Assembly (NCBI RefSeq): GCF_902459465.1
Contig: NC_047070.1
Span: forward strand, 19,406,001 to 19,470,000
Direction: 5' to 3'
Length of the DNA: 64,000 nt
Source of the DNA: Asterias rubens
Lineage: Eukaryota
Below are positions 1,142 through 62,707 of this stretch, piece by piece (the stretch's first letter is position 1; every line of letters starts with the position of its first letter). Under the pieces are notes generated by a model. That model saw only the letters and a list, made by a program, of their open reading frames with translations, ran no database searches and was not told the origin of the DNA. A program made the translations under genes and the position numbers.

Positions 1142-1186
1142 AATGAAAGGGAACAGACTCTAAGCAGTTCCATATGGTTGACATTG
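1142..1186 (+). CDS. Gene A exon (loop D), NEREQTLSSSIWLTL
   Basis: Acceptor ctacag, donor gtaagt. 45-nt size and sequence match the conserved nAChR DEKNQxLxTNxWL exon. Confidence 0.92.
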
Positions 1187-1920
1187 GTAAGTAGCGATAC
1201 ACAATTTCTCCTCATACCGAGTCAATATGTTTGATATACGATACAAAATCTTCCCATACAGAAATATTTGAATGATAATACTCGCTGTAGGGATCCGTGC
1301 TACCGTCCTTGAGTAATGTACAGTTGAATTGATACGATTTCCGAAATGCTGGAAATATCTCGCACTGCCAATATTGACGCACTTAGTACTTTGTCAGTAA
1401 AATTGATAATATCATAAGGTCATGGTTGAATATTGGCAGAGAAGTCACAATGTGGCGGGACCAGTTCAGGAGATTGTACTCTCAAAATGTCAAATCTGCT
1501 AAACACATGAGTGTTATTATTATCATACTTAAGAATGTCTGAGGAAGCGAACTTGGTGTTAAAAACATTTTGCTTTTTGATTTTAAAATTTAATATTATT
1601 TTCAGAATGCGTAATGGTTACAGGCATTGGACGCTATTGGTGATTACTCAAAATAATTGTTAGAAGAAAACAAACTTACTTGGTAAATGGATAACTGTTA
1701 ATAGTATACAAAATTGCGAGAAACGGCTCCCTCTAAAGAAACCTAGTTTTTGAGTTAGAGGTATTTTCTCACTCAAATATTAAAAGACTTCGGGCCTTAA
1801 GCTTTTTTGTCGCACCTAAAACTTTGAGTAAAATCACACAAGTTTGATGACCAATTAAGTCCTAATTGTCACCGATTTGTTACAATATGCATAATTTGGG
1901 GGACAACAAGTGAGGATACT

Positions 1921-2170
1921 GCCGTCGATTTCACCAAACTCTTCCTAACTTAGGATTAATCTTAGGACGGGTTCAGTTCCGTATCCAAATACGTAGGACG
2001 CATTGAACCCATCCCAAGTTAAGACGGGTTACTCGTCCTAACTCGAGTTAAGACGGGTTACTCGTCCTAACTCGAGTTAAGACGGGTTACTCGTCCTAAC
2101 TCGAGTTAAGACGGGTTACTCGTCCTAACTCGAGTTAGGATTAATCCCAGCGTTTCGTGAAATCGGCTGC
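1921..2170. mobile_element. Nested small inverted-repeat element (GTCGATTTCAC termini)
   Basis: Imperfect TIRs gccgtcgatttcaccaaac / gtttcgtgaaatcggctgc. A related copy lies at 17415-17533. Confidence 0.7.
2017..2132. repeat. 29-bp tandem repeat, 4 perfect copies (AGTTAAGACGGGTTACTCGTCCTAACTCG)
   Basis: Directly visible 29-bp period. Each unit is nearly self-complementary. Confidence 0.95.
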
Positions 2171-2302
2171 CATGTCTTTTACAGTTACTAAATGTATCCA
2201 GTGCCTTTAATAATGCAGTTGCAACCAAAGTAAACCTTTGTATAGTCTATGATTATTAAAAAGCAGTATACACCCTTAAGAAATGTTCTCTTCTCTGTAC
2301 AG

Positions 2303-2412
2303 ACTTGGACGGATGATTACTTGACATGGGATCCTGACGACTATGGTGGAGTCTATGTGTTCAAAATCCCCTCGCACGAAATATGGCTTCCTGATATCTA
2401 CTTTTATAACAA
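2303..2412 (+). CDS. Gene A exon (loop A), TWTDDYLTWDPDDYGGVYVFKIPSHEIWLPDIYFYN
   Basis: Acceptor tgtacag, donor gtgaga. Classic 110-nt nAChR exon with WxDxxLxWDPxxYGG and WxPDxxxYN motifs. Confidence 0.95.
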
Positions 2413-4434
2413 GTGAGAAAATCATAACCTTGTATTTTTATTAATAATTGGTGGTGTATCACTGTATATTTGGTTGGACGTTACACCATGTGTGTATCTT
2501 AACTTGCCAGATGTTGTTCTTGTCAGAACTAACTCACAAACAATTACTATTTTGTTTGTAAACATTTACAAAAACAGCAGCAAATACCAGCACACTTCAA
2601 GATTGTTGTCATTTGCACCGTCTGGTACTTGCTCGTGCGATTGTCAACCATTAGCTGTTTACTTCATCAACAGTTTATGGTGTGAAATTCATTTTTACCG
2701 TCTTGTCTGTTAGGTTAATCTCTTTCATCTTGAATATTGTTTCCTTCAAGTGCAAAGGAGTGGATTATTTTAAGCCATAAAGTACAACCACAAGGTCTCT
2801 GCTGCAATTGATATGTTTGGTTTCATTCCAACAGGCTCATTATTTTATCAAAGAGTAAAACTTTGGCGTTGACTGATTGTACTTTTAAGAGCCACATTTA
2901 CCTACTCAGATATCTAGTCCAGTAACGACGAAACGAGGGTTGCAATCGCTTTAAATACCTACCGTTAAACTGAATGTTCAAATACAAACAAATATATTAA
3001 AAACACTCTATATATAACATGCCTAAGACAAATCCATCCAACAACTCACTTTCTTGACAGAAGTCTCTTTTCTATCAAGGTTATACGTTTTACACTGACA
3101 ATGAAAAGCTTGCTTCAGTCCGTGATGCCTGAGCAAAGTCGACCATCTTTGCGTCCGTAAGAATCTGTATTTAACTGACGGGAAGAACAGATATTCAATT
3201 GGGTCCTTGTACTTGTAAGAGTATTATCTGCTCGAATTACTGCCTCTTTGCTGTTACCAAGATACTTTAACTCGTTCTTATTTGCATAATGGAGTAAGGG
3301 TTTACAATATAGATGTTTTGCTGAGGAAGGGGAAGGGGGAGGGGGGGGTCAAATATAAAGTCGATACCAGCATACCAGTGTTATCATGTTCAATCATGCT
3401 GATTATAAAAAGAAGATATATTTTGAATGTCGCCTTATTTCAGTTGCTCGGCAAGTCTATATCGACAAGCATTCTAAAAAAATAAAAAATAAAACAGACC
3501 TGCACAAAGAGGTTGCCATGTTTCTTCAAGCTATTGACTACGCTTCATGGAAACTCGAGGGTTTAAACGATTCTGCTCTTCCCTCATCCATAGAAACAAG
3601 GATATATGAAGAAAACCAGTTGTCAATCATTATTTGTTATCAATACTTGTCAGGATTCTGGTCCTTGACATTTATCATAAAAACACAATTTGTGTTTCTC
3701 AAATCAAACCCCAAAAGAACCACTTGATCAATACAAGGTCAATGAACTTGACAAGTGCTGTCAAAACAAGTCGAGCGATCGAATTCTAATGATTTTCCGT
3801 GCATAGACAAAACTGTCCCTCCCAACTTAAAATTCAGGTAAACAGTTTTTTATCAATAACTTGCAAATAATTTCCAACTGAATTTTCAAGGGTTATGCAA
3901 ACAAAATGGTAAGCGTATTCAATAGGTTGTTTCGGGGATTTCGGTCACTACAGCATTCCAAATTGAAATGTTCAAAGAGCATCACAACCTAAAATTATGT
4001 ATTGTCGTCTTTGTGGTAGGTAGATGACTGCAATGTTTCCTTAACTAATTCCCGTAACGCATTCAGACGCACCAGCTGTTTATGACACATGGCCGCACCT
4101 AAGGAGTTGGCTGGGAACCTTTGCATCTCATCAAGGCTCTCAAGTAAATTGTGTGTGATATGTTATTTTGCTCTTGCTTACAAGCGAATGGCAAAAACAT
4201 CTTTACCCGAGAACTCTTAATTTGCTTTCAAAGGAAAATACACAAAGTTTGGCGGCCTTAGGAAGAGGAATTGACTATACCTTCTTAAAAGTATTTAGTG
4301 TAGTTTGGGACCAACTGAACAAACTTTATGGATGTAAAAAGTGATAAAGCCAAAATAAAACGAAAACTATCCCATTGACTTTTCCTGTAAAAAAAACACA
4401 CCCACCAAAGTATGAAAAGCTTTACGTTTGAGAA

Positions 4435-5620
4435 GACCAACTCAAGTATGGTTACGCCGATGACTTGGGTATTCTGGTGGCCCACAAGCACTGTGAAGTC
4501 ATTGGGAGAACCCCCAGCCTGGACATGGATACCTTGTCAGCTTGCTTGACGAACTGGAGCCTAAAGCTGACCGAGGTGCATATAATATCAGCAGCAGTCC
4601 AGCTGACCAACAGAGAGGCCAAACGAGAGCGGGACGTACAGGTCAACGGCAGCGACTGACTTTCTAGTCACCTCCACATCCCTTGGTGTAAATCTTGACA
4701 CATGGTAGGCCTGCGATCACCATTGCGCAGACAAAGGTACGGGACATAGAAGGAGCCAGCGTCTCCTCACATACACACCTCTGCCTTGACCTGGCACCCA
4801 TGGTCAGCCAACACAAGCAACTATGAGAGCCTCAAAATGGAGACGTGTCTGTAACTTAACCATGGGTGATGTTGCAACCAACAACGTGGAGCAGTTTTCA
4901 CCGAGAGCACCTGCTCCCTAGGTCATCGCTTAAGATATTAGACAACCCTGACCCAAATCAAAGCGACAATTCGCAACAACAGAGGCTAAACTAGCACTTC
5001 CAACACTAACACCTCATGCCCAAATTGACTGCCACAAATCGTCACAACAGTGGCACCAGAGGCAGAGGTACCACTCCCACAGGCACACACAAAGACAGTG
5101 CACCAATACCTCATACCCAAATTGACTGTCACACATCGTCACAACAGTGGCACCAGAGGCAGAGGTGCCACTCCCACAGGCACACACAAAGACAGTGCAC
5201 CAATACCCCCATGCCTAACGGACTGCCACATGGTCGCAACAATAGCACCAGTCATCATAGCCCCTGAAAGAGCCTCATGCCCAAGCTGTATACACTCCTG
5301 ACCCAGACCTCATTCGGCATGCATAGGTGAAGCTAAACCGCTTACTGGAAAACAGAGAATCACATCATTAGGAAGTGCCCCCTCCATCAACCACCAGTGG
5401 AACCCCAAGGTTTGACCCATGTTCCCACATCGAGTCAGGATTGGCTGCTCAAAACCAAGCTCAGGATCTAAGTCTACCCCCTCCTCCTGAAGAAGACCAT
5501 TGACCTCTATACTAACCGTTCATGCCTCCCCATCTTGGCGAGCAATGACGCAGATATTGCCGAAGGCAATGCAGAGGAACTCATCTGTAGTATTGCCCAC
5601 TGTGTGTGTCTGAAGCGTCA
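4435..5620 (+). mobile_element. Decayed non-LTR retrotransposon (reverse transcriptase 3' half; I/Jockey group, ingi/Vingi-like)
   Basis: Translates as KYGYADDLGIL...DMDTLSACLTNWSLKL...NREAKRERDVQVNG, then frameshifted LGVNLD and later (W>stop)VKLNRL. YADD catalytic motif present; stops and frameshifts throughout. Confidence 0.8.
5012..5250. repeat. 97-bp tandem duplication (about 2.4 copies) inside the LINE remnant
   Basis: Units start at 5012, 5109 and 5206. Explains the repetitive ORFs 5016-5267 and 5050-5301. Confidence 0.9.
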
Positions 5621-6008
5621 CTATTTTATTATTCCTCATTGGATCATGACAACTTGGGCAAAACGTACAAGTTCACCGATGACGGTAAAATGAGCCCCAA
5701 AATGGTTTGTGTTTCCCTTCAGTGGTGTCTTGATTGAGAACCATCAGACTGGAAACAGTTGAGGTGTAGTTGGATATAATTGACTTGATGCTTGACTCGC
5801 TAAGTATCACTTTCGCTACAGGAGTTATATTGAAAGGACCACCATTGGTGTCTACCTCCAATAATAATTGGAGAGTCATGTTGTTGTAATATCCCTTTCA
5901 AGTCCATATGGTTTTTGTCTGCTTGGTTAAAAGAAACAAATGTGATTTTAGGCATTGCATGGTAATGTATCAATGTATTGCGGTAAACACCATGTTTATG
6001 TCTACTTG

Positions 6009-6208
6009 CCAGGGTCTAATTTCTTAGAGCTGCTAGGCTCAAAAATTTGCTTAGCATGAAATTTCTTCCTTGATAACAACAGGATTACCAACCAATTTTC
6101 CATTTGTTGCTTGCTTGTCCTGAAAATCACGAGGATATTTGGTTGGCATTCCTGTTTTTATCAAGGGAAAAATTGTTGTGCTTAGCAGCTCTATAAAATT
6201 GGGCCAGG
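6009..6208. mobile_element. ~200-bp foldback MITE with CCWGG-type ends
   Basis: ccagggtctaatttcttagagctgctaggc pairs with gcttagcagctctataaaattgggccagg. Inner arms ttccttgataacaacaggattaccaaccaa / ttggttggcattcctgtttttatcaagggaa. Confidence 0.75.
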
Positions 6209-6348
6209 TAGAGTTTCTTCTCTAGAGAACTGTCTTGCGTTATTTTACTGCCAAGGAGAAGCATTTTCCCGATTTTTCGTGAGATTTCTCAGTTTTGAAG
6301 AAAGACGTTTACCTTGGTCCATAGATCACAGAGAAAGAAGAAGATAAG

Positions 6349-6650
6349 AAACAGACCACTTCTGGGGCTCAAACTAAATCGTCTTTGGATAGTATGTTCC
6401 CTTTTTTTCATGGCATGGGTATAAACAAACCGACCATTACTGGTTGCTCAAACCAGGCGTCTTTGACATTATTTTCTTTTCTGCATGGTTATAAACAAAC
6501 CGGCCTTTACTGGTGCGTCTTTGGATATGATTATCTTTTCTACATGGTTTAAACAAACCGACCATTACTGGTTGCTCAAACCAGGCGTCTTAAAATATGA
6601 TGTTCTTTTCTGCAAGGTTATAAACAAACCGACCATTACTGGTGCTCATT
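6349..6650. repeat. Degenerate tandem repeat, ~55-70-bp unit, about 5 copies
   Basis: Recurrent (ta)taaacaaaccgaccattactggttgctcaaaccaggcgtctt motif. Confidence 0.85.
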
Positions 6651-7298
6651 TCCTCATCCTAAGACTCTTTGGATATTATTTCAGCCGCAGATGCAGCTCG
6701 AGCTAAAGCCAAATCTGGTGATTTTGACTTTGGCAAAATAATCCGAAGTCTCTGAGGAGAGTGGAACATCGCGGGCAATTGCGTAAGCTGTACCGACAAA
6801 CACTGTCAGGTTATACTCCAATAGAACTATATTTCGATCAAATCCACTCCCAGTTGAAGTTCTGACGGCATGCCGAATAATCAACCTATTTCTGGTACAA
6901 AGTTTTGTTCAGTTCTTATTCTATTTTTCAGTGGTCCGTGAATTTGACGAAACCTAAGGAAGTGTAAAATGAGGTTGTGCATGCAAGTGGAATATAAAGC
7001 GTCTGTATAAACGCCGATGTACCTTAATGCATCCAAACACTAAAGTTGAGAGATTTATTCAAAAAAGGCCAATTTAATTTAAGTTGTTTTAATATAATAA
7101 TGTTCGACCTATTTCACGGACCTCTAAAAAAGATAATGGGATTTTAAATTCGTTATAACCCACCGTCTTCAAAATCCGGGTAGGGCCTACCTTACTTTAA
7201 AATAAAACTTCACACTAAAGATGCGTAGAATCATTCTCAGATCACCAAAAAAACAGCACCTTTAAAAACTAACTATTAAATTTTTGTTCCAAACTTGT

Positions 7299-7662
7299 TT
7301 GAAAGGGTGTATGTACTTTTTGTAGGACAAAAAACACAATTTCCACAGATTTACACTAAACTTACACAGTTCGAAGATAATGATAGTAAAAAGCTTCCCT
7401 GAAAATATTACGTGCTGAGGTGCTGTAGTTTTTGGGAAATGAGTAAAACAATGTCATGAAAATAGATGTTGTCTCATGAGCGAAAATTATTTTTTTAACA
7501 TTAACAAACGTATTTTCATGACAATGTTTTACTCATTTCTCAAAAACTACAGCGCCTCAGTAACTAATATTTGAAGGGAAGCTTTCCACTATCATTATCT
7601 TCAAACCCTGTAAGTTTAATGTAAATCTATGGACATTTTGAAAAAGTACCCGAATCCTTTAA
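7299..7662. mobile_element. MITE family 2 (TTAA-flanked foldback)
   Basis: Long internal inverted arms (cacagatttac...aagcttccc...gtagtttttgggaaatgagtaaaacaatgtcatgaaaat and their reverse complement). Near-identical copy at 36181-36540. Confidence 0.88.
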
Positions 7663-8070
7663 ATGTCATTTCACGGCAGAGTGCTTTCTACCCACATCCA
7701 TTATTTATCTGTGAAATTATGGAGTAGTCTGGCTAATTTAATGACTACAATTTACAAACTAAGGAAAAATACTTAAAGCCCTAATTAGTTTGTAAATCGT
7801 AGTCATTTTAAAAGTGATAATTATACAGATTATTACCATACATTCACAGGTGAATAATGCAGGTTGGTGAAGACTTTACTGCCGTGAGATGTTTGCCAAC
7901 CTTCCAGTCTAAAAGATAAGAGTATAATCATCAAAGTTTTGTAGGCTGTTTTTTTTCAGGTAAAAAAACATCCACTCAACCCTTAAAACGGTTTAAAAGA
8001 ACATTAGGGTTGGCATTTCAAAAGATTGCCGTGCTCACCTGCCACGTTGGGGTTCTGGCTTTATTACTAA

Positions 8071-8190
8071 GTCAAGCTGACGATCAGAGCATACTAATCG
8101 AAACGTCGAGTTGAGACCAACGGTTCTTTTCAGAACCATCCCAACTCATTTAGAGATAGTCATCACATGGTGTTACCGCTAATCCTTCTA
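8071..8190 (+). repeat. Dispersed ~120-bp repeat beginning with a degenerate minimal hammerhead-like fold (Penelope-like terminal remnant)
   Basis: Second copy at 40578-40700. Contains GATCAG-agcata-CT(A/G)ATC-GAAAC-GTC-GAG. Confidence 0.6.
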
Positions 8191-8610
8191 TATATCGTAA
8201 AGTTGAACATTGTAGAAGCTTGATAGAAGGTTAATATACCAGATACAAACACCGTTTTGTATCAGATGTATAGCTCCTGTATACACGGAGGTATCATAAC
8301 TACTTTACATCAATGACGAAACAGGAAAGATTCTCAACTACACATTCACTTCCGACGTACGGTGTGACACATGGATAGGGAGCAATATAAAGACTCCATT
8401 TGAAATGCACAGGGCATTAATTTTGTATTAAATTACTTGTCTCCCTTCAAGACATTTAATCATATAAAACTGCCATAATCTTTTATCTGCAGATCTATAC
8501 TAATAGCGACTAACCCCACCGGCCGACTTCTTAGGGATCTTTAAAGCAACTATATGACTGATCTTCTATTAACAGGATTAACGTCTCATCCAGTTATAAA
8601 CAGCAGCGGT

Positions 8611-8749
8611 GAAAATGGCACCCAGTTGTTTGTATCGATACTGGCTCCTACACAAACTCGAAAATGGCACCCAGTTGTTGGTATCGATACTGACTCCTAC
8701 ACAAACTCGAAAATAGCACCCAGTTGTGTTTCCCTACACAAACTCGAAA
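8611..8749. repeat. 49-bp tandem repeat, about 2.8 copies
   Basis: gaaaatggcacccagttgtt...ctcctacacaaactc units start at 8611, 8660 and 8709. Confidence 0.9.
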
Positions 8750-9720
8750 CTCTCATGTCAAGTTTAATATTGGTCACTACGATTGGGACTCAAATGAAAC
8801 AGCAATTAAAATGCATCTGACACATTGTATTTAACTTTACTTGCACCAAGCTGTGCAAGACATCTGTCATTCCAATAGTCTATTAATCTTTATTTATATA
8901 CTTTGATGCCTTAACGTAGCAGTCAAGGGCAGAAGCGCCCATTAACCGCTTAAGATATAGTAGTACCTGATCGGCAACATTTAAATACATATTGACAGTG
9001 AATAAGCGCACTGTTTCCGAAGTAATGGCGAGATATTTTAATAAATTGGATTCTTACACAGGCGGTGATTGTCAATATAAATTGCATTAATGTTAACGAT
9101 TTGTTTACTTTGTAATGACACATAATTCAGATTTTTGCTGCCAGTTGGTTGTTTAATAAAAATGAATGAATGAAATGAATGAATAAACATCTGAGGAAAT
9201 CAAAACAACATTGATAGATAGGCACATTGTAATCAATGACCATCACCTACTAGCGAAGACTTACATCAATGTGATTGGTCATGACTTGAGAATATCTCAT
9301 GAATATTCATGAACAAACATGTTCATTAGAATGACTTAATCAATCAACTGTCATTGGTCAAGGGTCCATGACTCTACGTCCCCATGGCTGGTTTTCAGGG
9401 GAGACCCAGCCCAAGAAATCGACGGGTCAATTGTTAATGCCTTGTCCATCCGTAGGGCATTCTAGTGTGGTCCTTGCTGGGAATGGAGACGGGATCTTTG
9501 TCGATTGCTTGTGGCAGATGATCAGGTGGATGTTTACGGTGGGCGACGTGGGGAAGATCGATCGGAAACAAGGGTTGGGAATGTCAACTGATTTACCTAA
9601 GAGGCAGTGACCCTTATATTGCTTCCTGAACACATTTCAAAGGATATATCTTAAAAAAATTAAAACATTTATTAACACTTAAATTAATCACAATGTTTTT
9701 TGGGTTTTTTTTTCAATTAG

Positions 9721-9923
9721 TGCCGAGCTGCAAACGAGAAACTTTCTTGTCGGTCCAGTGGTCAAGATCTTCTCTAATGGGGGAATCATGTGGGCAGCCC
9801 CGGTCAACTTCAAAGGGTACTGCCTGCTCGATGTTCGCTACTTCCCATTCGACCATCAGCACTGCGATATGAAGTTTGGTCCATGGCAACACAATGGCAA
9901 AGAGATAATCATGGAGGGACACG
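9721..9923 (+). CDS. Gene A exon (loop E, Cys-loop, loop B), ...YCLLDVRYFPFDHQHCDMKFGPWQHNG...
   Basis: Polypyrimidine tract plus attag acceptor, donor gtaata. Cys-x13-Cys loop with FPFD. Overlaps ORF 9758-9964. Confidence 0.96.
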
Positions 9924-10440
9924 GTAATAATAACTCAATTTGTGTATACACGTTTCTTTCTTAGTAGTGCTGTCGATAGAGGGCGCACACTCTATAGAGT
10001 GAACCGGACTGTTGCTAAGATGAGCTCCGTTTATTGTGGCGATCAAGCCGTATCCCGTAATACAGACACAGTGTCACAGGGAAATCTGTCCGCCGGAGAC
10101 ACTGTACCCCTTTATTGCAAATTAACATGTGCTAAAGGAGGATGTGTCAAACAGGGGCGCTATCACAAAAAGTTTATACACAGTTCGCCTTATGTGGGAC
10201 AAAAACATTTTAACGAAGGGTTGTTGTTTGTCGATAGTGGCAGTATTGGAACAAACAAGCAGTTTGCAACCTCAATAAGTAGATGGATGGTTTGTGAGCT
10301 TTGCTTATACTTAATATGATAAAAAGACTGCAGACTGAAATTAATGTTTTTTCTTCTTTTGTTCTCCTTTTTTTTTAACAACAAAGTACGATAATGTAAA
10401 ACAGCTCTTGTGCTGATTGTTGTATCCTGTATAAATATTT

Positions 10441-10471
<31 letters not shown>

Positions 10472-10557
10472 TTATATATATATTTTTTTTATATGATTAA
10501 CTTAGCCGTTTTAGCAGTGTATTCATTTCTGTTTTGTTGCCTTGATTCTCTCATCAG

Positions 10558-10884
10558 GTAGCCAGTCAGTGTTCATGAGTAATGGTGAATGGGACATGAC
10601 AGGCATCAGTACCGTAGATAACCTTGTATATTACCCAGACGATCCAGGGGTCCCCTTTACAGATACAACCTTCACCATCAAGTTCTCAAGACGTTCAGAG
10701 TTCTACGTCTTTAATCTTATGATGCCATCGTGTCTGATTTGCCTCATGGCGGCGCTCGCTTTTCTGCTGCCACCTACGTCACAAGGAAAGGTCAATCTTG
10801 GGGTCACGTTTCTATTGTCGATGACAGTGTTTCTGATGATTGTTGCTGAGTCTATTCCACCGACCAATCAGGTCCCAGTTATCG
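10558..10884 (+). CDS. Gene A exon (loop F/C, M1, M2, M2-M3 linker)
   Basis: Acceptor catcag, donor gtaagt. Encodes SNGEWD...YYPDDPGVPFTD...RR..FYVFNLMMPSCLI...LLPPTSQGKVNLGVTFLLSMTVFLMIVAESIPPT..VPVIG. Confidence 0.96.
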
Positions 10885-11283
10885 GTAAGTGAATAATAAC
10901 CATTGACCAATAATCATCGACCTTTGCTGGACTTTTGGGGTCCGCTTTGGTCGATGATCAATGCTATAGCCCACGTGTATAGTGTTTTCGATAGATTGTG
11001 TCTGAATTGATTATTGACGCCAATGAGCACATTGATGTACATTTATTAAAATGAATACCGATTCTGACTGCATTATGAGTACATGTTTTTATTTCCTTTT
11101 CTAATTAATGAGTGTGTTATGGGTGAGTATGCAGAAAACACTTTCGAACACAATATGATAAATATTAGAGGTAAATTGAAAATTAATCGTTTAGTTTCAC
11201 GCAATATTTGCTGTTGACCCAAAACAGAAATTAATAAAATGTGTACTGATATCAAACTATGTTTGGTGCTTTGTTCTTGTCAG

Positions 11284-11876
11284 GTCAATATTTTGCTGCA
11301 ACAATGCTGCTGGTATCCTTGTCGTTGGTTCTTAATGTCATAGTTGTGGCCATCTTTACCCACGCACTTACCGGGCAGCCAGTTCCAAGATACATTCGTA
11401 CTATTGTCCTTGGTGTTTTTGCTCCAATTGTTCGCATCTCTTCGGAAGAAATCCGTGATATTCGTCGAAAAACCTTTAAGCAAAAGAGTCACAATCATAA
11501 AGTTCTGACGAAGTCCGGAGGTGGAACCAAGTTTACTACCGTCCCGAGCAAGGAACATTCAAAAACACATGGAGTCAATTTCTACATGGATTACGTACCC
11601 AACTCGCATCATAGCAACGACAGTGACAACTCCAAGAGACACGGGGAACAGTTCGAAGCTCTCACGCGAGAATTGAAGAAAATGAACGAGACCTTGGCCC
11701 ATATGAAACAGGGTGAGAAACAACTGACACCCGAGCAGAAACGAAACTACAGAGAATGGGTTTTAGTCTCACGTGTTCTTGATAGAACCTTTCTTGTTCT
11801 TTACTTACTTGGCAATATTTTATCTGTTGTTTTGCTAGTGTTACCTGTCATGATACGAATGCAATCAGCCTCGTGA
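11284..11876 (+). CDS. Gene A last exon (M3, intracellular loop, M4, stop)
   Basis: Acceptor ttgtcag. Encodes GQYFAATMLLVSLSLVLNVIVV (M3) and EWVLVSRVLDRTFLVLYLLG (MA/M4), ending in TGA. Matches ORF 11259-11876. Confidence 0.96.
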
Positions 11877-14800: not shown

Positions 14801-15454
14801 ATATTTACTGATTATCCAAGCTTGTTGAATTTAAGCAAATTGTTTATTTGGCAAATAAATTGTGTCGAACCGTTTCAAACAATGATAATAAATCAAATGG
14901 TTTGAGTATGTATTTTTTTCAAAATACTGTAAGGAACATCGACCCATAGATTGATGAATTAAACATGGGGAAATAATTCTGCCCTAGAATTTTAAAGGTC
15001 ATGTTAAAATCTCACCCTAGTAATATGCCTGTGATTTGTTTTACACATATCTGGGGAAAGTACATAGTAAACCAATGCTATCGCTTGAAGGGTAAAGCCT
15101 AATTAATATTCTTTATTCCCGCTGCAAATTCAACAATATTGAAATAATCAAAATAGAATCAACAGAAATTAATAGTCAATGCGCAATACTGTAATTATTA
15201 CAATGTCAATATATCAGTGTCTCATGTCCATCAATCATAACTAGCACAAGTATATAATACTTATCCATATTTAACATTATTAGGGTGATTGAAAAACCTG
15301 TCGCCATAAAGGCCCCCACTAGCTCTATTCAACACTTATCTTCTACCTTATTGGATGAATAGTCACATGAACTGTCATAATCATATCTCACATGTTACCA
15401 CAAGCCTTGTTGAAATCACATGATGATCATAGTCCTCTACACAGAAAGAACTTA

Positions 15455-15950
15455 TCATCATCACCACAAAATCATGATTGCCACCACTACACCGCCACTA
15501 CCACTACCACCAAGTCCAACCAATAGCACCAGCCGACCAGCGACAGCACTAGTACCACTCCCGCCAAAAACAAACACCATCAACCGAACACCACTTCTAC
15601 ACAACCACCACCACCACTAAAATCATCATCACTTCACCCATATCACCACTATCACCACCACCAGCACCAACACCCTCATAACCCCTACCACCCACCATCA
15701 TCACCACTACCATCACCATCGCTACCACCACCACCAATACTACCAACATCACAACCACCGCTGTGTCATCACCATCGTCACCCCCTTCACCACAACCACC
15801 GCCATCACCATCAACAAACTCCCCAGCAGCAACACTACCACACCATTATCACCCAACCCCTATCCCATCACTTACAACAAGTTTCCATCATCTTAATATT
15901 ATCCACACAATCTCAGCAAGTATATCATCACATTATTATTTATTCATCTT
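15455..15950. repeat. (CAC/CAT/CAA)-rich low-complexity trinucleotide region between the two 3' ends
   Basis: Degenerate CACCAC/CATCAC runs; source of the Pro/His/Thr-rich pseudo-ORFs. Confidence 0.85.
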
Positions 15951-16018
15951 ACTATTCTGAAGTTTCATTACCATCATGGTCAGCCTTGCTGGCAATTTTA
16001 CAACATCAATATCCTTTA

Positions 16019-16326
16019 TTAAAGACCCTGGACACTATTGGTAATTGTCCAAGACCAGTCTTCTCACTTGGTGTATCTCAACATTATGCACAAAATAACA
16101 AACCTGCGAAAATTTGAACTCGATTGGTCATCGAAGTTGCGAGATAATAATGGAAGAAAAAAACACCCTTGCCAAACGAGTTGTGTGCGAAAAACTATGT
16201 TACTTCAGAGGGAGCCGTTTCTCAACATGTTTTCTACTATTAACAGCACGCCATTGATCGATAAAAAGTAAGTTGTTATGCTAACAATTATTTTAAGAAA
16301 AATACCAATAGTGTCCAGTGCCTTAA
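16019..16326 (-). mobile_element. MITE family 1 copy lacking the central hairpin
   Basis: TIRs ttaaagaccctggacactattggtaatt / ataccaatagtgtccagtgccttaa. gtgtgc joins directly to gaaaaactatgttac (about 80-85 bp missing). Confidence 0.88.
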
Positions 16327-19382: not shown

Positions 19383-19942
19383 TTAGACCTGCACAAAAAA
19401 CACGAGGAAGGTTGTGGCTGATCCAATCAAGCACATAAGAAAGAAGAACCTGTCCAAGACAATGGCGACCCTCTTCCACTCTGTCTGCACCCGTCTCGAA
19501 TTCACCTCCACCTCGATGCTGAATGTAATCTTTTGCATCTCCCGTAGCAACGCAAGATAGAGGGCGCGATTCCTATGCAGAGAGTCCTTGTTATCACCTG
19601 AATCATTTTGTCTGTTTTGTTCCGATTCGTCGCCTTTGTTTTCCACGTTACATCCATTCGATACCACTCTTGATCTGGAAGAGTTACCGGTCACCTCAGC
19701 CATTAGGCTCTTTGTCTCCCATGATTTGAGCTCCTGTGCGAGCCTGTCTCCGATGGTTGGACGTCGTTTGGAGCGACTGCTCTCTGATGGTAGCAGTACA
19801 CGACCGATACCATTCAGTATGTACTTCTTGATCCATGGTGGAACAGGTTTGCAGTCAGGGCCTCGGTGGTGCATATTGAGGACTGTTACAGACATCCCGA
19901 TTGAGATTGAGATCAGCACCATCGTGCAGGCAAAGTACTGAC
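19383..19942 (-). CDS. Gene B exon 8 (M3, intracellular loop, M4, stop)
   Basis: Acceptor ttttcag. Encodes GQYFACTMVLISISIGMSVTVLNMHHRGP...EWKRVAIVLDRFFF, ending in TAA. Confidence 0.97.
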
Positions 19943-20261: not shown

Positions 20262-20469
20262 CTATAACGGGAACTGTACTCGTGGGTGGCATAGTCTCCG
20301 CCACCAGCAGCAGGAAGACGGTGAGTGACAGTAACACCGTTACACCAAGACTAACTTTCTCTCCAGACTCTGGAGGTAGGAAGAACGTCAACAGCGACAC
20401 CAACGACAAGAACATGCAAGGGATCAGCAGATTGAAGAGATAGTAGAGTGGGCGCCTCTGAAATAAAAC
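20262..20469 (-). CDS. Gene B exon 7 (M1, M2, linker)
   Basis: Acceptor cttgtag, donor gtgaga. Encodes [18 protein letters not shown]...[40 protein letters not shown]. Confidence 0.97.
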
Positions 20470-22187
20470 CTACAAGAAATAAACATGGTTAGTAAAAGTC
20501 TAGCGAAGTCTCGTGCGATATACGGGACCTTGGATGACCTGGTATTGACTATTTGTAATGATGTGGAGGAAACAATGTGCTGTGCGAGATTTGTACATCA
20601 TTACTATTATCAGACTTTCCAAGTAGTTCTCTTTTGTGAAATAAAGTAATTTGTCCGAAAAAGTCAATACCTACAAAACATTAATAGTAATACATATCTT
20701 TGTAAATGATCGTGTCGTTTCCATAATTATACAAGCACTGTCATTTCTTCTACATAACGACACAATACTCTGCCCATACATTCATTTTGTTTCCCATTTG
20801 ATGCAGATGCAAACAAGAACCGACATTCTTAACATCATCATGTCCGCTGGCTTAAACTTTAGACTGATTAAACAGTTCATTTCATTGGTGTCACTTATTG
20901 TTTGTCATGGCTTACAAATGTCAAAAGGTATCCGGCAAGCCTGTTGGTCTATACTGCTGGTGTCTTTGGGGAGTTATTGCCCCGGAGAACCCAAAAGAAA
21001 ACGTGATTGTCCGTATCAACTTGGACGCATTGCTTCTTCAACATAAAAACGATCAGTGAATTATCTTTCTATTTCAATCCTTTGGGAGTGGTTATCATTA
21101 CATCCAAAGCAAGGACGTATACCATAAGACATACCCCAGGCTATGGAAACAAACAGCAGCGTTTAAAAGTTAAATTTAACTTGAGGACAGAAACTGAGTA
21201 TCAGGTAGTCCGCTGTGTATGAGCGATTTTATTTGAAAGACTTGATTTCATTTGGAAGACTTGAAGCAGGAGGTCTGAACCCATTGTGCCTTTAGTGGTA
21301 AACGTGACTTGTATCCGATCATACAAAACCTACTATGGAAGTCTGCATCACGTAGGGCATATACAGTGTAATTATTAGTCATCTCTCTTGTATTTTTAAT
21401 GGCCATTTCTTCTTCCTTCACCTGAAGTCAACTGACAAATTCATAATTGGCTTTTGACTTAATACCAAATAGAAATTAAGTAGCGGTGCACAGAATTAAA
21501 GAATGGCGATAAGCGTGAGTTTGTTTTCTCTATACAGATCTCCGGGTAGTTAGTATTCACTGTGACCCAGCTGTTCGTGTTTTGCTATTCCCTAAACACA
21601 TCTAATATATCGTCATAATGCAAATCTACCTGTCGTTGGGTCCTTAAATGTATTGGAGGCATTTTTAAATAGAGGTAACTGTTGGCCCGTTTAGCCTAAA
21701 TAATTCAGAGCGTCTCGGAACGACTTATTTACACTTAGTTTGACTTAGTTAAACGAGCTGCATTACCTTACGCTTGAATTCAACTACACATGCATAGACC
21801 ATTTAGACTAATAAAGAACAAACTAGGTCCCACCTTCGGCGGTTTTTGCTGAGCGAATGTTGAGGGAGCTACAATTGTGATCCTGGAAGGTTGTAATTTC
21901 ACACTTGATATACTCTCGCTATAAACCTATCAACTTGGTTTTTGAGCTGGGTTGCCGATGGCGTTCGAATAGTAAACAAACAACTCTGATTGGCATATAT
22001 TTTTAATTTTCACACACACCAACACACACCATAATCAATATAAGGCAAAAATTGCTAAAATCATGGTCAATCTGCTTTTAGGACACTAACCCGATTCGAC
22101 AAACTTAAAATAGAACCAGAATGTTGAAGATTCATCGTGACTTTAACTCGTAACAAGTTGATACCCAACCTTAGTCAGTGTACCCAC

Positions 22188-22309
22188 CTCGTACACAACG
22201 TCAGTGTATTGTTTACCAGGGTCGTCTGGGTACTCCATTTTGTTACTGTGCACTGTGACCTCGATCATATCCCACTGGCCATCGCTATTGAAAACAGTTT
22301 CATCGCCTC
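22188..22309 (-). CDS. Gene B exon 6 (loop F/C), GDETVFNSDGQWDMIEVTVHSNKMEYPDDPGKQYTDVVYE
   Basis: Acceptor ttatcag, donor gtgggt. Phases 1 and 0 fit the flanking exons; homologous to gene A SNGEWD...YPDDPG. Absent from the ORF track. Confidence 0.94.
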
Positions 22310-25849: not shown

Positions 25850-28098
25850 ATCAGAGTCTCTCATTTTATGATAATCAGAATCTGGCGTCAACGTTCTCCC
25901 TTACTATACTTAGCATGCAGCGGAGGAGCACATATTTAATGCTTTTAAAGTTCTACAACCACACAACAAAGTGCTTGCAGCTCAGCATTTGAATCGAAGC
26001 TTATTTTGGGTATTATAATTTCAATTATTTATGAAAAAACACAAATAAAAGGGTAAAATAAATAATTCTCAAGCCGGCAGTTTATTAACTAGTTTATCGT
26101 TAATGCGCAGCAAGGATGGGAAAGGGTATGTTTTATAGATGTTCGATGGACTAATAAATTGTACCTTTACTAAGTTCAACTTGCTAATGAATGAGTTATG
26201 GATGTCTAATGGATGGATAACATATGTTTTAGGTTGTATCATAAATCTTGTACAAGTAATATGCAGCTACAAGAAAGATGTTGCAGTATGTTGCTGCTTT
26301 AATGTCTCGTAAATTTAGGCTATGTTTCAGCTACAATGTATGGTGGCAAATATGAAAATAAATAGTGTTGGGGATAAATTTATAAAAATAATGTAATAGA
26401 AAAACAATCTATAATGGTTTAACAATGAAACACCAGCATTCGTGACTAAAAATCTGAAAAAGAGAAGGGCTGAGTTCAAAATTGAAATATAACAAATATA
26501 AACTGGATTATGATAAGTATTCAGTTGAAATGTTAGTAATAACTCTAAAACCAAGACAAGAACCGATATAGATAATCAATGTACTTTTAATGACTGAATG
26601 CAATTTGGTTGTTTGAAAGCAAACAAAAACCCCAAATCTACCGATTAATAACTTTACTTAGAATGGAAAAACCATTAAAATCAATGAATTTTAAAGTCGT
26701 GAAAGCCAGTGATTACAAAACGAAAATGCTATAACGATGGACAAAGAACCAAAGCATGTAGGAAAATGAAGAATAAGTTGGCAAAGATGTATTTTGGATT
26801 CGGGGAGAATGGGAATAGGGAATGGCAAGCAGCGGTGGGTTATATGAGCAGGATTGGAGTAATGCTTAAAGGCGTTCTGGACAACAGAACAAGAAAGTGG
26901 GAGATAAAGCGACTGGCAATTGGAATGGTAAAATCTGTGTTATGATATAGGGCCTTACCGCCTTCAGATGTAGTGGTGTGGTCATCTTTATCTGAATGGG
27001 CGAACCGACATAATATTACACATTACTTCAATAGTGTTGCCTTTAAAGTAAACATACTCAAGTAAGCAATCAGTTGATCAGGAAATTGTGGTTCTCAAAA
27101 AAAAATAATGATCCGCGTGTATTGCCATGTTTCATTTCATGTTTGAATTGTAAGAAGAAAAGAACATCCGAAGCACTTTTCTTTTGAAATGTTTTTGATA
27201 ACTGTTAAAACACAAAATAAGAGGGACAAAACATCAAACAGATCAGAAAGACCACCAGGTCACGTGTGAGGTGACGTCATCGAATAAGGATCTCGCAAGA
27301 CACAAACATGTACTGACTATACACTTGGGATCTTCTTAGTTGAAACGTGCAGCGTAACACTACGGGGTAATAAAGTAAGTAAACTCAACAGCTATTTCAT
27401 TTTCCCTTAACAAAAATAGCAACTATTTATAGTGCAATGTTTGCAGGCACGTGCATTGAGTGCAGACAAACTAAGGGTATTTTAAGCGCCACGGTGGATC
27501 CATTAGGAACAAAATACAGTTTGGCCATTATTGTCACTTACTTTGCATATTCAGAAGCATGATTAATATGTACATAAATTATGCAAATAAAGGCAGTTCC
27601 TGCGAAACACCGTATTCGATCCCGCTCCTCATTGTTTGAAGATAAGTCTTTTGAATGTCAACCTCTGACCTTCGTTTGTTATCAAGGTCCAATTTGATAA
27701 TAACTTTGAATTCAAAACAGTTCGCTCCCGATATTCAATCTCTGCAGTGACGTCATTGCAAAAGATTGATTGAAAACCTAAAGTTGAAGTACCATGTATG
27801 GTACTACCCTACATCAAGTATTCATAGTAACGTAATAAATGATTAATGATTATTGCAAATAATTGTTTGTAATAGCATGGTGGGAGTACGAGGCCTTGCG
27901 GTTATAGATGAAAGGCAGACACCTCATAGAACTTGTAATGTTAAAAGAAATTGGGGTAATGTGTCTACATATGGATGACCATGCATTACCTAAACATTGC
28001 TACTATCCATGTTCATGCGATATTCGAATTATTCCCTTAATTAATGTCTCTTATAAATGAACGTCTTAGTGGGGATAATACGAAAGTGTTCCTCTTAC

Positions 28099-28298
28099 CA
28101 GCCCCAACGACGACAACTTCTGTTGCATCATGCTGCCACAAACCAAACTTGAGTGTACACGTTTGCTTATCAAAGGGAAATGTGGTGATGTCAATTTTAC
28201 AGTAGGTAGTGAAGATTTGGGGGCAACCCCAATTGATAGACCCGTCGTAACTGATGACTGCTGTCTGACCCTTCAGAAAATTGGCGTATTTGTCGGCA
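28099..28298 (-). CDS. Gene B exon 5 (Cys-loop), ...YCKIDITTFPFDKQTCTLKFGLWQHD...
   Basis: Acceptor cttcgcag, donor gtaaga. Cys-x13-Cys with FPFD; 200 nt, phases 2 and 1. Absent from the ORF track. Confidence 0.96.
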
Positions 28299-33264: not shown

Positions 33265-33374
33265 TTATTATAAAGCGTGACGTCGGGCATCCATATCGTC
33301 TCAGAAGGAACTTTGATGTTCTTAAGGTTGTTATAATCCTTAGGGTCCCAGGTAAGATACTCATCTTGCCACTT
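33265..33374 (-). CDS. Gene B exon 4 (loop A), KWQDEYLTWDPKDYNNLKNIKVPSETIWMPDVTLYN
   Basis: Acceptor ctgcag, donor gtataa. 110-nt conserved nAChR exon. Confidence 0.95.
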
Positions 33375-33750: not shown

Positions 33751-33894
33751 TAGAATACTAGCATATAGGCCTACTAGAATACTAGCATATAGGCCTACTA
33801 GAATACTAGCATATAGGCCTACTAGAATACTAGCATATAGGCCTACTAGAATACTAGCATATAGGCCTACTAGAATACTAGCATATAGGCCTAC
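33751..33894. repeat. 24-bp tandem repeat, 6 perfect copies (TAGAATACTAGCATATAGGCCTAC)
   Basis: Exact 24-bp period. Each unit contains the palindrome TAGGCCTA. Confidence 0.97.
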
Positions 33895-35745
33895 TTTAAA
33901 GTACTGCGACATTTTCTACGGTTCCGAGAAAAGTGCAAAAGTTCATCGAGCCAATGTCGTTTTGACTTGGCGCATTGGATGACAATAATGGTTTAGCCAA
34001 CTGTGGGCTTCGTGTTATTAACAGGCTTTGAATACCAGACTGTAAGATGAAAATGTGACTCCTTCATGCCTCATTGACGGGCACCTTTCATGAAACTTCA
34101 GGAGAACATTTGTAATACTGTTACTTTATTTGAGTATCAAACGATAACAAACACCATGACGATTCATAAGCTGTATCAAATTTGTCATCGCTATTGGTCC
34201 CTGTTAGGCTAATGATTACCGCAAAGAGAGTTAAACGTGTTAACATTATGCATTTTCGTTATTAATTTTGAAAGAAAAGTATTTCCCAAGGTGACTTGCA
34301 TTTGTACATTTAAAAAAAAAAAGAAGATTTTTATTAACATCTATAAATTATGTTGAAGTTCAATTATTACCCATTAACCGTAATTTTGTTTATTTAACCG
34401 CTTTTAGATAGCAATCCCTTAAATATACACGTGAGAGAAAACAATGTTCCCTTGTGTTTGAAACGCGGGTATCTTAAATTTGATAAATTAACACTTAATG
34501 TTATTTCCAACAGTTTAATTATAGTATGTTTTTGAAAAGCAGTTGAGTAGGCTACGCCTATGTTAGTCTCTTGCTCCACTTATGACGCGTGCGTTCATCG
34601 AGACTTTGAAAGGAGCGCCAAAGGCTTAACGACCGATGTATAATGCTTTGAAACTTGGTAATCAGTGCCATCGGTAGTCCGCAGACAATGTTGAAACAGC
34701 TGCATGGTTATAAAGACGGCAGGTCACTAGACGGCTGTTACCTGGTTGATTTGTTGTTAGCTTGTATCTCTCTCATGCTAACTGGAATCTCTTTTTGAGC
34801 ATCTCCAGACGGCTGTTATATGTACGATTTGATGCTAGTGCCTCTGTCTGCCCGAGAACTGTAGTCTCAACTTGTTACTTTATATCCCAACAGGTGAAAT
34901 CAATATGTTTTCTTCTTAAGAGAGAGATTGCTTTTGACTGTTTAAAGTAACAGAGAAAAATTACTCAGGTGGGAGCCAATCGAAGAAGGGGGGCAACGAT
35001 GTCAAATAACCGACTGAAAACCGTATATTTTTGGAAGCAATTACACCTGAAAGCGAGCTCGGGTTTCAAGATAATTTTCCAAATGTTTTGCAATCGTATT
35101 CGATGAAGCATCTTTGAGAAATGACGAGAAAAACTTAATAAATATTGAGCGAAGACCATCATCTGTCGTCGGGTTCTTAAACCCCTTTGAGCAAAATACT
35201 CCTGCACAACAATTATCTGTATATAACTTAAAGATTAACGAACTCCTTCAACCTGGTTGAATCTAGCCCCTTTTCATCATGAATCGAAGACTGAGGGGGC
35301 AGGTGTTGCCCACTAGGCCCACTCTGTTCCCCACCAAGCCCTAAATGGGTAAGGTAGAGAACCTTTCAGCATAGGGGATAATGGTGCTGAATCTTGGCTC
35401 GCATAATGCTGACATGATTATTATCGCATGGAAATAAACCTGAACCAAATCTGATGGTTTATTGACGTTTGCCCTTATACTGCCCATCTGGTCATATTTC
35501 AGGCAAGTGTTGAAGTTTCTAAACAAGTTTAACATGTCACATTATAATAAATCTTTAAAATAATAAAGAGTAACATTTCCTGGAAGGAGTATTTTAACCC
35601 ACCGCTTTCAGCTAATATTTGTTCCTCATGTCTAGATTAAACACGGCTATGTAATTGATGTTGGTGTCAGAATGATGGAACAAATCAACAGTATGTTTGT
35701 TCTCTTGATTTGTATATACTTAACAGAACATCACATGAAGCTTAC

Positions 35746-35790
35746 CAAAGTCAGCCATACATTTGTCTTCAATGTCTGTTTCCGCTCATC
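35746..35790 (-). CDS. Gene B exon 3 (loop D), DERKQTLKTNVWLTL
   Basis: Acceptor ttttcag, donor gtaagc. 45 nt; 9 of 15 residues identical to the gene A equivalent. Confidence 0.94.
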
Positions 35791-62637: not shown

Positions 62638-62707
62638 CTGTGCATATGATGACTAGACACACTGATAAAATTCCCCACCAAACTCTGTTCCTCCATGACC
62701 AATTCAT
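62638..62707 (-). CDS. Gene B candidate exon 1 (signal peptide), MNWSWRNRVWWGILSVCLVIICT(G)
   Basis: ATG with A at -3; basic n-region and hydrophobic h-region. Phase-1 donor CAG|GTAGGA joins exon 2 in frame to give ...CTGRQILA-TEEH. Implies a ~17-kb first intron. Confidence 0.72.

What the first reader, a model, noticed from the sequence alone, without database searches (positions are those of the whole stretch)
22200..22232. The divergent paralog carries the same YPDDPG loop C: a conserved subfamily signature, not decay
Seen: gene B loop C is Y-P-D-D-P-G-K-Q-Y-T-D (codons GAC GAC; gene A has GAC GAT), while the neighbouring residues differ widely between the paralogs. Each Cys(TGY)>Asp(GAY) change needs two substitutions. 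Gene B retains all the classic aromatics (loop A LYN, loop B GLWQH, loop C Y and Y, loop D VWL). Inference: YPDDPG predates the duplication and has been held by selection, so it defines a receptor subfamily. The shared non-canonical loop B motif W-Q-H (canonical W-T-Y) supports this.
Basis: partly seen in the sequence, partly recalled or inferred. Interest (0 to 1): 0.75.

Follow-up and report, generated by a model that had tools for sequence, protein, structure and literature searches.

The report
Starfish receptor loop: Asp replaces Cys-Cys
A starfish gene for a nicotinic-type ion channel subunit carries Tyr-Pro-Asp-Asp-Pro-Gly where acetylcholine-binding subunits have two bonded cysteines. 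This is the conserved mark of an old receptor family found only in echinoderms and acorn worms, but only the first Asp is fixed, and the family's ligand is unknown.

Summary
Window 22232-22200 (minus strand) encodes YPDDPGKQYTD in the loop C exon of a 9-exon gene. That gene is identical to Asterias rubens XP_033633525.1, annotated 'beta-2-like'. The convergent neighbour, gene A (XP_033633008.1), has YPDDPGVPFTD.

- **Not decay:** the reading frame is intact, spliced transcripts exist, and 8 of 11 differences from a sister species are synonymous.
- **Not gene conversion:** the paralogs are 39% identical, and 3 of the 6 motif codons differ at the third base.
- **A clade signature:** 69 proteins, all from echinoderms or hemichordates, form one clade with four orthogroups that predate the split of the two phyla.

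The signature is Y-P-D-x-P-G plus loop B G-P-W-Q-[HY], not 'DD'. The first Asp is present in 67 of 69 proteins. The second position is D29, A20, S5, T5, H5, Y4, M1. Sea urchin and sea cucumber orthologs of gene B have Asp-Ala.

Whether DD predates the A/B duplication is unresolved. Human beta2 also has Pro-Asp-Asp at this place.

The scan had already reported this signature on gene A in this window (s1-150161). The ligand is unknown, and acetylcholine is plausible. The finding is of moderate interest.

The parts
22200..22232 (-). The finding itself: gene B loop C tip, Y230-P-D-D-P-G-K-Q-Y238-T-D240. The YPDDPG core is at 22215-22232.
   Evidence: Translation. In the AF2 model it is the turn between strands 216-229 and 237-249, with pLDDT about 95.
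22188..22309 (-). Gene B exon 7 (122 nt), the loop C exon.
   Evidence: AG/GT borders. 100% match to P0156. Spliced contigs join 22186 to 20467 in runs X1 and X4.
62638..62707 (-). Gene B exon 1 (start codon at 62707, signal peptide).
45546..45697 (-). Gene B exon 2 (N-terminal helix and beta1).
35746..35790 (-). Gene B exon 3 (45 nt), loop D Trp86 in NVWL.
33265..33374 (-). Gene B exon 4, loop A (WMPDVTLYN).
28099..28298 (-). Gene B exon 5, the Cys-loop (C159-x13-C173) and loop B GLWQH.
26959..26991 (-). Gene B exon 6, a 33-nt alternative micro-exon (DKDDHTTTSEG) in the loop F region.
   Evidence: Including it gives isoform X1 (P0156) and skipping it gives isoform X2 (P0367), both exactly. 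pLDDT is below 70.
20262..20469 (-). Gene B exon 8, M1 and M2 with the canonical cation-type pore (PPESGEK ... LLVAE).
   Evidence: A spliced contig joins 20260 to 19940.
19383..19942 (-). Gene B exon 9, M3, the cytoplasmic loop, M4 and the stop codon.
10632..10664 (+). Gene A loop C tip, YPDDPGVPFTD (the paralog used for comparison).
1142..11876 (+). Gene A (XP_033633008.1, P0269). Exons seen in the window: 1142-1186, 2303-2412, 9721-9923, 10558-10884 (loop C, M1 and M2 in one exon) and 11284-11876. The 5' exons lie off the window.
   Evidence: The 410-aa model is 100% contained in P0269.

Best explanation
Gene B is a working, expressed gene for a nicotinic-type (Cys-loop, cation-pore) receptor subunit. 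It belongs to a clade found only in echinoderms and hemichordates. In the ancestor of that clade the agonist-binding face was remodelled once. In loop C the vicinal Cys pair was lost and replaced by Tyr-Pro-Asp-x-Pro-Gly. In loop B Ser-Trp-Thr became Pro-Trp-Gln. These changes have been held by purifying selection ever since, through the duplications that produced gene A, gene B and the neighbouring third gene. Only the first Asp (D232, aligned to Cys192) is fixed. The second (D233) is a tolerated, lineage-dependent position.

Inferred mechanism: the Pro-Asp-x-Pro-Gly turn makes the rigid tip of the beta9-beta10 hairpin that the disulfide makes in alpha subunits. It places a carboxylate over an otherwise intact aromatic box (W86, Y124, W180, Y230, Y238). 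The subunit therefore most likely still closes loop C over a small cationic agonist, with acetylcholine or choline the first guess, and gates a cation channel, alone or together with its clustered paralogs.

What is shown: gene structure, expression, clade, and site conservation. What is inferred: the structural role of the turn, the ligand, and the assembly.
For: - **Gene and expression:** nine exons with AG/GT borders translate exactly to XP_033633525.1. Spliced contigs in two runs join exons 7-8 and 8-9 at the predicted sites. Of 11 differences from the probable A. amurensis transcript, 8 are synonymous, which gives a rough dN/dS of about 0.1.
- **No gene conversion:** A and B are 39% identical, and the motif codons differ at 3 of 6 third positions.
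- **Clade:** the closest 50%-identity representatives and all named relatives are echinoderm or hemichordate proteins. With the loop C columns removed, 69 of them form one clade against 25 alpha7/9/10-type rows (SH-aLRT 99). The clade has four orthogroups, each holding both phyla.
- **Site counts in the 69 proteins:** Y190 68, P191 63, D192 67, P194 63, G195 47. Loop B: P148 61, W149 69, Q150 63, H/Y151 69. W55 is present in 66, Y93 in 69 and Y/F198 in 69. D232, P231, P179 and Q181 are among only ten columns that are at least 88% conserved in the family and at most 10% in outgroups.
- **Fold and pore:** the AF2 model has mean pLDDT 85, and the loop C hairpin has pLDDT about 95. The best structural matches are muscle alpha1, alpha4 and alpha7 chains (TM by target about 0.9). 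The pore has -1' Glu, 9' Leu and 20' Glu.
- **Synteny:** the convergent B/A pair is also present in the sea cucumber H. leucospilota.
Against: - No functional data exist for any confirmed member.
- The vicinal disulfide is needed for high-affinity acetylcholine binding in alpha subunits (established knowledge). Its loss is what normally defines non-binding 'non-alpha' subunits.
- Human beta2, a complementary subunit, also keeps Y93, W149 and Y198 and has P-D-D here. Retained aromatics therefore do not prove a principal-face role.
- K145 and D200, the residues that couple loop C to gating, are kept in only 54 and 52 of 69 proteins.
- The side-chain orientation of the Asp residues could not be read from the model output.
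Confidence: 0.55

Rival explanations
1. Gene B is an accessory 'non-alpha' subunit. It offers only its complementary face (or a purely structural position) in heteromeric acetylcholine receptors, whose agonist sites are made by the Cys-Cys alpha subunits that echinoderms also have. On this view the YPDxPG loop is conserved for assembly or interface reasons, not for ligand binding.
For: There is no vicinal Cys pair. NCBI names it beta-2-like. The best solved-structure match of gene B is human beta2 at 3e-90, whose loop C has P-D-D in the aligned place. Cys-Cys-bearing relatives exist in the same phyla (P0310, P0357, P0220).
Against: The family-specific, highly conserved substitutions sit exactly on the principal face (loops B and C). 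A non-binding face would be expected to drift there. Y190, which beta2 has lost (Asn), is kept in 68 of 69 proteins. Gene A's best structural relative is homomeric alpha7, not beta2, so the beta2 likeness is not a family trait.
Confidence: 0.28
2. The remodelled pocket binds a transmitter other than acetylcholine, for example another amine or a quaternary ammonium compound. The clade would then be a separate ligand class of Cys-loop receptor.
For: Coordinated changes in loops B and C have been held for more than 500 My. A new carboxylate sits at the loop C tip. No Cys pair is present. The clade is restricted to two phyla.
Against: All five aromatic-box residues typical of acetylcholine sites are kept. 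A paper reports that one 'Ambulacraria-specific' nAChR-like channel of a sea cucumber responds to 10 uM acetylcholine (PMC10120082), though I could not show that it belongs to this clade.
Confidence: 0.15
3. The motif is decay: gene B is a degenerating copy that lost its Cys pair.
For: Only the absence of the Cys pair itself.
Against: The 499-codon frame is intact with canonical splice sites. Spliced transcripts exist. Synonymous changes exceed non-synonymous ones 8 to 3. Orthologs exist in all five echinoderm classes.
Confidence: 0.01
4. Gene conversion between the neighbouring paralogs copied the YPDDPG stretch recently.
For: The two genes lie 7.5 kb apart tail to tail, and six residues are identical in a divergent context.
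Against: The 18 nt differ at 3 of 6 third positions. The flanks show no local rise in nucleotide identity (0.51-0.56, against 0.4-0.7 elsewhere). The same motif is present in each gene's orthologs in other classes.
Confidence: 0.01

Closest known systems
Vertebrate neuronal nAChR beta2 subunit (PDB 8ssz_B, 5kxi_B)
   Same: It is the best solved-structure match of gene B (3e-90). It lacks the vicinal Cys pair, and Pro-Asp-Asp aligns with gene B's Pro-Asp-Asp (eNPDDs--tYvD against eYPDDPGkqYtD). It has a cation-type pore.
   Different: Beta2 has Asn in place of Tyr190, a loop two residues shorter, and canonical loop B W-T-Y. Gene A and the invertebrate alpha7/ACR-16-like proteins score differently: gene A's best match is alpha7, and insect alpha7 scores 360 bits against gene B, compared with about 307 for beta2. 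Orthology to beta2 is therefore unlikely, and the shared P-D-D looks convergent. This was not tested with a tree that includes beta2.
Alpha7 / ACR-16-like and alpha9/alpha10 homomer-forming nAChR subunits
   Same: These are the nearest non-ambulacrarian relatives by score and in the tree. They share the fold, the Cys-loop, the aromatic box and the pore rings.
   Different: They have Y-x-C-C-P/K-E and G-S-W-T-Y. The clade has Y-P-D-x-P-G, one residue longer, and G-P-W-Q-H/Y.
'Ambulacraria-specific' nAChR-like LGIC group of Chen et al., PNAS 2023 (PMC10120082)
   Same: It has the same phyletic restriction and is described as lying beside the typical nAChRs. One member (Hl-07243) gave Ca2+ responses to 10 uM acetylcholine in HEK293 cells.
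   Different: That group is called 'highly expanded', whereas I find only about 4 members per echinoderm genome. No sequences or supplements were readable, so whether it is the same as this clade is unknown. The paper does not mention loop C.
Cys-Cys-less nAChR-like subunits of lophotrochozoans (Jiao et al. 2019, PMC6896357; annelid proteins such as Capitella ELT90136.1)
   Same: Some have a similar tip, x-S-D-P-G-[IV]-P-F-P (P0046, P0078, P0084, P0100, P0139).
   Different: Loop B there is D-W-A-Y, not P-W-Q-H. They lack the Tyr-Pro-Asp start of the motif. The similarity is probably independent.

Membership tests
Cys-loop (pentameric ligand-gated) receptor superfamily | Extracellular Cys-x13-Cys loop | tested here: met
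   C159 and C173 in CKIDITTFPFDKQTC. Both are invariant in 69 of 69 family rows and 23 of 23 outgroup rows.
Cys-loop (pentameric ligand-gated) receptor superfamily | Ligand-binding beta-sandwich domain plus four transmembrane helices | tested here: met
   Precomputed Pfam PF02931 and PF02932. The AF2 model has helices 252-274, 281-303, 312-339 and 433-498. Foldseek TM by target is about 0.9 to nAChR chains.
nAChR alpha subunit | Vicinal Cys192-Cys193 in loop C | tested here: not met
   Asp232-Asp233 occupy the place. By the standard definition gene B is therefore a non-alpha subunit, despite the 'alpha-10-like' names given to its relatives.
Cation-selective nAChR-type pore | -1' Glu (GEK), 9' Leu, 20' Glu in M2 | tested here: met
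   E281, L293 and E302 in gene B. Gene A instead has QGK, with no -1' Glu.
Acetylcholine-type agonist site | Aromatic box: W55, Y93, W149, Y190, Y198 | tested here: met
   W86, Y124, W180, Y230 and Y238 in gene B. In the family they are kept in 66, 69, 69, 68 and 69 (Y/F) of 69 rows. Actual binding is not testable with these tools.
Vertebrate beta2 orthogroup | Groups with beta2 in a phylogeny; reciprocal best match | tested here: inconclusive
   Beta2 is gene B's best PDB match but not gene A's. Invertebrate alpha7-like proteins score higher in the large database. No beta2 sequence could be brought into the tree.
Ambulacrarian YPDxPG clade (unnamed) | Falls inside the clade in a tree built without the loop C columns | tested here: met
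   Gene B (P0156) sits in orthogroup IV with starfish, brittle star, crinoid, urchin and sea cucumber orthologs (SH-aLRT 99). The whole clade has SH-aLRT 99.
Ambulacrarian YPDxPG clade (unnamed) | Signature residues: P191, D192, P194, G195, and loop B P/x-W-Q-H/Y | tested here: met
   All are present in gene B, except that loop B has Leu for Pro (GLWQH). It shares this with Acanthaster and one Saccoglossus protein.

The most novel reading that the evidence does not exclude
The YPDxPG / PWQ[HY] clade is a distinct, ancient receptor class of echinoderms and hemichordates. Its pocket was rebuilt either to bind acetylcholine without the disulfide or to bind a different cationic transmitter. The three clustered genes (third gene, B, A) would encode co-assembling subunits of one channel, with gene A contributing a pore ring that lacks the -1' glutamate.
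Probability: 0.25. Interest if true: 0.7.

Novelty: new variant of a known kind. Interest (0 to 1): 0.45.

Why it matters
Cholinergic signalling controls muscle, tube feet and mutable connective tissue in echinoderms, but the receptors are almost uncharacterised. This clade offers a natural experiment. For more than half a billion years a nicotinic-type pocket has kept its full aromatic box while an Asp in a Pro/Gly turn replaced the vicinal disulfide that textbooks treat as the hallmark of agonist-binding subunits.

If these subunits bind agonist, they show a second way to build loop C. If they do not, they show that an interface loop can be as conserved as a binding loop. The practical consequence is for annotation. 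The database names of these genes ('alpha-10-like', 'alpha-9-like', 'beta-2-like') are misleading, and the residues that define the group are D232, P231, P234/G235 and loop B P-W-Q, not 'DD'.

Tried and rejected
1. **Gene conversion and pseudogene readings.** Both were tested and rejected.
2. **Ancestral state of the second Asp.** The backbone branches are weak (SH-aLRT 80-92), so I give it little weight and call the question open.
3. **Beta2 orthology.** No vertebrate beta2 sequence could be obtained as a protein id, because the word-indexed search returned alpha7, alpha9 and alpha10 instead. The comparison therefore rests on PDB scores only. The profile search is uninformative because alignment A1 contains alpha7-type rows.
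4. **Link to the PNAS 2023 'Ambulacraria-specific' group.** No supplements are held. The neighbourhoods of the H. leucospilota members show no tandem array of the kind the paper describes. This remains unresolved.
5. **Literature searches.** Searches for a description of the loop C signature in echinoderms or hemichordates found nothing specific.
6. **Per-site dN/dS.** It was not possible because ortholog coding sequences were not assembled. Protein-level site counts and one pairwise synonymous/non-synonymous count were used instead.

Full report
**What is at the coordinates.** The window is animal DNA with about 36% G+C. Read on the minus strand, 22232-22200 is TAC CCA GAC GAC CCT GGT AAA CAA TAC ACT GAC, which is YPDDPGKQYTD. 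It lies inside an exon that begins after an AG and ends before a GT. A motif scan finds a second YPDDPG on the plus strand at 10632-10649, with typical nicotinic-receptor loop A and loop B motifs on the matching strands.

**Gene models and identity.** I assembled both genes from stop-free stretches and splice sites. Gene B is encoded by nine minus-strand exons: 62707-62638, 45697-45546, 35790-35746, 33374-33265, 28298-28099, 26991-26959, 22309-22188, 20469-20262 and 19942-19383. All internal borders are AG/GT. The translation is identical to Asterias rubens XP_033633525.1, 'neuronal acetylcholine receptor subunit beta-2-like isoform X1' (P0156). Skipping the 33-nt sixth exon gives isoform X2 exactly. 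Gene A's 410 residues visible in the window are identical to XP_033633008.1, 'alpha-10-like' (P0269); its 5' exons lie off the window. The window corresponds to LR699100.1:19,406,001-19,470,000.

The two genes are convergent, with 3' ends 7.5 kb apart. A third relative (XP_033633591.1, loop C IYPDDPLVNF) ends 3.2 kb beyond the window's end, on gene B's strand. A fourth (XP_033637061.1, NYPDAPQY) is on another chromosome.

**Is it decay or conversion?** Neither.
- A and B are 39% identical over 392 aligned residues, with no local rise of nucleotide identity around loop C. The six motif codons differ at three third positions.
- Assembled contigs from public runs join 19940|20260 and 20467|22186 exactly at my exon borders. 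One run matches at 99% or more and one at 95-99%. The gene is therefore transcribed and spliced, including the intron between loop C and M1 that gene A lacks.
- The 95-99% contig carries K227T and A382S, the same changes as the A. amurensis protein. Of its 11 listed exonic differences, 8 are synonymous.
- Two of the eight amino-acid differences between the two Asterias proteins flank the motif (K227T, Q237H), while YPDDPG is untouched.

**The family.** An exhaustive HMMER search with gene A's loop C-M1-M2 exon found 5337 relatives. Among the best 150 representatives, only a handful lack the Cys pair in a YPD-type loop. Word-indexed searches with full-length hits then gave names. Every close relative is from an echinoderm (starfish, brittle star, urchin, sea cucumber, crinoid) or a hemichordate (Saccoglossus, Ptychodera, Glandiceps). 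After these, scores drop to alpha7/ACR-16-like and alpha9/10 proteins of other phyla.

A maximum-likelihood tree of 94 proteins, built with the loop C columns removed, puts the 69 ambulacrarian proteins on one side of a branch with SH-aLRT 99. It resolves four orthogroups, each holding both phyla (a first tree agrees).
- Gene A's group is independently marked by a pore motif S-Q-G-K in all 15 members.
- Gene B's group has one ortholog per echinoderm class.

So the A/B duplication is older than the echinoderm-hemichordate split. The convergent B/A arrangement is also found in Holothuria leucospilota, 8.4 kb apart. That is an inference.

**What exactly is conserved.** In the 69 proteins the counts are as follows.

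| Position | Count (of 69) |
|---|---|
| Tyr190 | 68 |
| Pro191 | 63 |
| Asp192 | 67 |
| Position 193 | D29, A20, S5, T5, H5, Y4, M1 |
| Pro194 | 63 |
| Gly195 | 47 |

On the tree, position 192 needs 2 changes. Position 193 needs at least 14, or 7 if scored as D against non-D.

Gene A's orthologs are DD in all ten echinoderm proteins but DS or DT in hemichordates. Gene B's orthologs are DD in starfish, brittle star and crinoids, and DA in sea urchins and sea cucumbers. Most hemichordate paralogs are DA.

Loop B is Pro148 (61), Trp149 (69), Gln150 (63), His/Tyr151 (54/15). All 23 outgroup rows have Ser148, and 18 have Thr150. P179, Q181, P231 and D232 (P0156 numbering) are four of only ten columns that are at least 88% conserved in the clade and at most 10% in outgroups.

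Whether the ancestor at the A/B duplication had DD cannot be settled here (see tried and rejected).

**How it probably works.** Gene B keeps the following features.
- The Cys-loop.
- All five aromatic-box residues.
- Lys145 and Asp200 (the gating couple of muscle receptors, from established knowledge).
- A canonical cation-type M2.

AlphaFold2 with the family alignment gives a confident nAChR fold (mean pLDDT 85). In the model, 230-236 is the tip of the beta9-beta10 hairpin, with pLDDT about 95. The nearest solved folds are muscle alpha1, alpha4, alpha7 and beta2 chains.

The family-specific substitutions are concentrated on the principal agonist face and are held as tightly as the aromatic box. 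From this I infer that the loop still works as the lid of a cation-binding pocket. The Pro-Asp-x-Pro-Gly turn would supply the rigidity that the disulfide supplies elsewhere, and would add a carboxylate.

The main rival is that these are accessory non-alpha subunits. Its best support is that human beta2 is gene B's top solved-structure match and has P-D-D in the aligned place. Against it, beta2 has lost Tyr190, and gene A's top match is alpha7. The beta2 likeness is therefore not a family property and is probably convergent.

**What is known.** I found no paper that describes this loop C signature. The H. leucospilota genome paper reports an 'Ambulacraria-specific' group of nAChR-like channels, one of which responds to 10 uM acetylcholine (PMC10120082). 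I could not establish whether that group is this clade. An earlier follow-up in this scan (s1-150161) reached the same family-level conclusion from gene A in this same window. My results agree and add four points:
- The second Asp is variable.
- The clade has four orthogroups.
- The gene cluster is conserved.
- There is transcript evidence.

**Verdict.** This is a new variant of a known kind: a clade of non-alpha nicotinic-type subunits with a conserved, rebuilt binding face. It is of moderate interest, and it is limited by the absence of any functional data.

Noticed in passing
window 26959-26991 (-): A 33-nt alternative micro-exon of gene B inserts the acidic stretch DKDDHTTTSEG between loop B and loop C (the loop F region). 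Its presence or absence gives NCBI isoforms X1 and X2 exactly. It is predicted to be disordered (pLDDT below 70).
   Followed up: partly
window 10770-10850 (+), gene A M2: Gene A's pore start reads PPTSQGK, with no -1' Glu. The same S-Q-G-K is present in all 15 members of its orthogroup, including hemichordates. It is therefore an ancient, conserved pore variant and not a recent loss.
   Followed up: partly
window 20470-22187 (-): Gene B has a phase-0 intron between loop C and M1. Gene A lacks it, because its loop C, M1 and M2 lie in one exon (10558-10884). The intron is confirmed by spliced contigs. All other shared intron positions and phases agree between A and B.
   Followed up: partly
beyond window end; L001:10001-30255: A third family member (XP_033633591.1, loop C IYPDDPLVNF) ends 3.2 kb past window position 64000, on gene B's strand. 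This gives a three-gene cluster: third gene, then B, then A convergent. H. leucospilota keeps the convergent B/A pair, with a BIR/RING gene nested in B's 128-kb span.
   Followed up: partly
P0327 (Glandiceps talaboti XP_077987841.1): This hemichordate subunit has Y-S-C-C-P-G-R-E-Y-P-D, with the Cys pair kept and the same loop length and Pro-Gly as the clade. Its loop B is G-S-W-Q-H. It may be a Cys-Cys-bearing relative close to the clade's origin. It sits on a long branch and its placement is unresolved.
   Followed up: partly
P0046, P0078, P0084, P0100, P0139 (annelid and unnamed): These Cys-Cys-less nicotinic-type proteins have the loop C tip x-S-D-P-G-[IV]-P-F-P, resembling D-P-G-[VI]-P-F of gene A, but with a different loop B (D-W-A-Y). 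The similarity is probably convergent.
   Followed up: no
window 47610-48518: A minisatellite of about 39 copies of a 23-bp unit (with 140- and 280-bp higher-order periods) lies in gene B's first intron. It accounts for the +0.2 GC skew at 46-50 kb and for the long spurious ORFs there.
   Followed up: no
window 15400-16100 (+): A CA-rich low-complexity stretch between the 3' ends of the two genes has GC skew -0.31 and gives His/Pro/Thr-rich open frames. There is no sign of a gene.
   Followed up: no
window 33751-33895, 2017-2137 and 5004-5251: Perfect or near-perfect short tandem arrays lie in introns: 24 bp x 6, 29 bp x 4.2 and 97 bp x 2.6. The last sits in a 46% G+C island inside gene A's long intron.
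   Followed up: no
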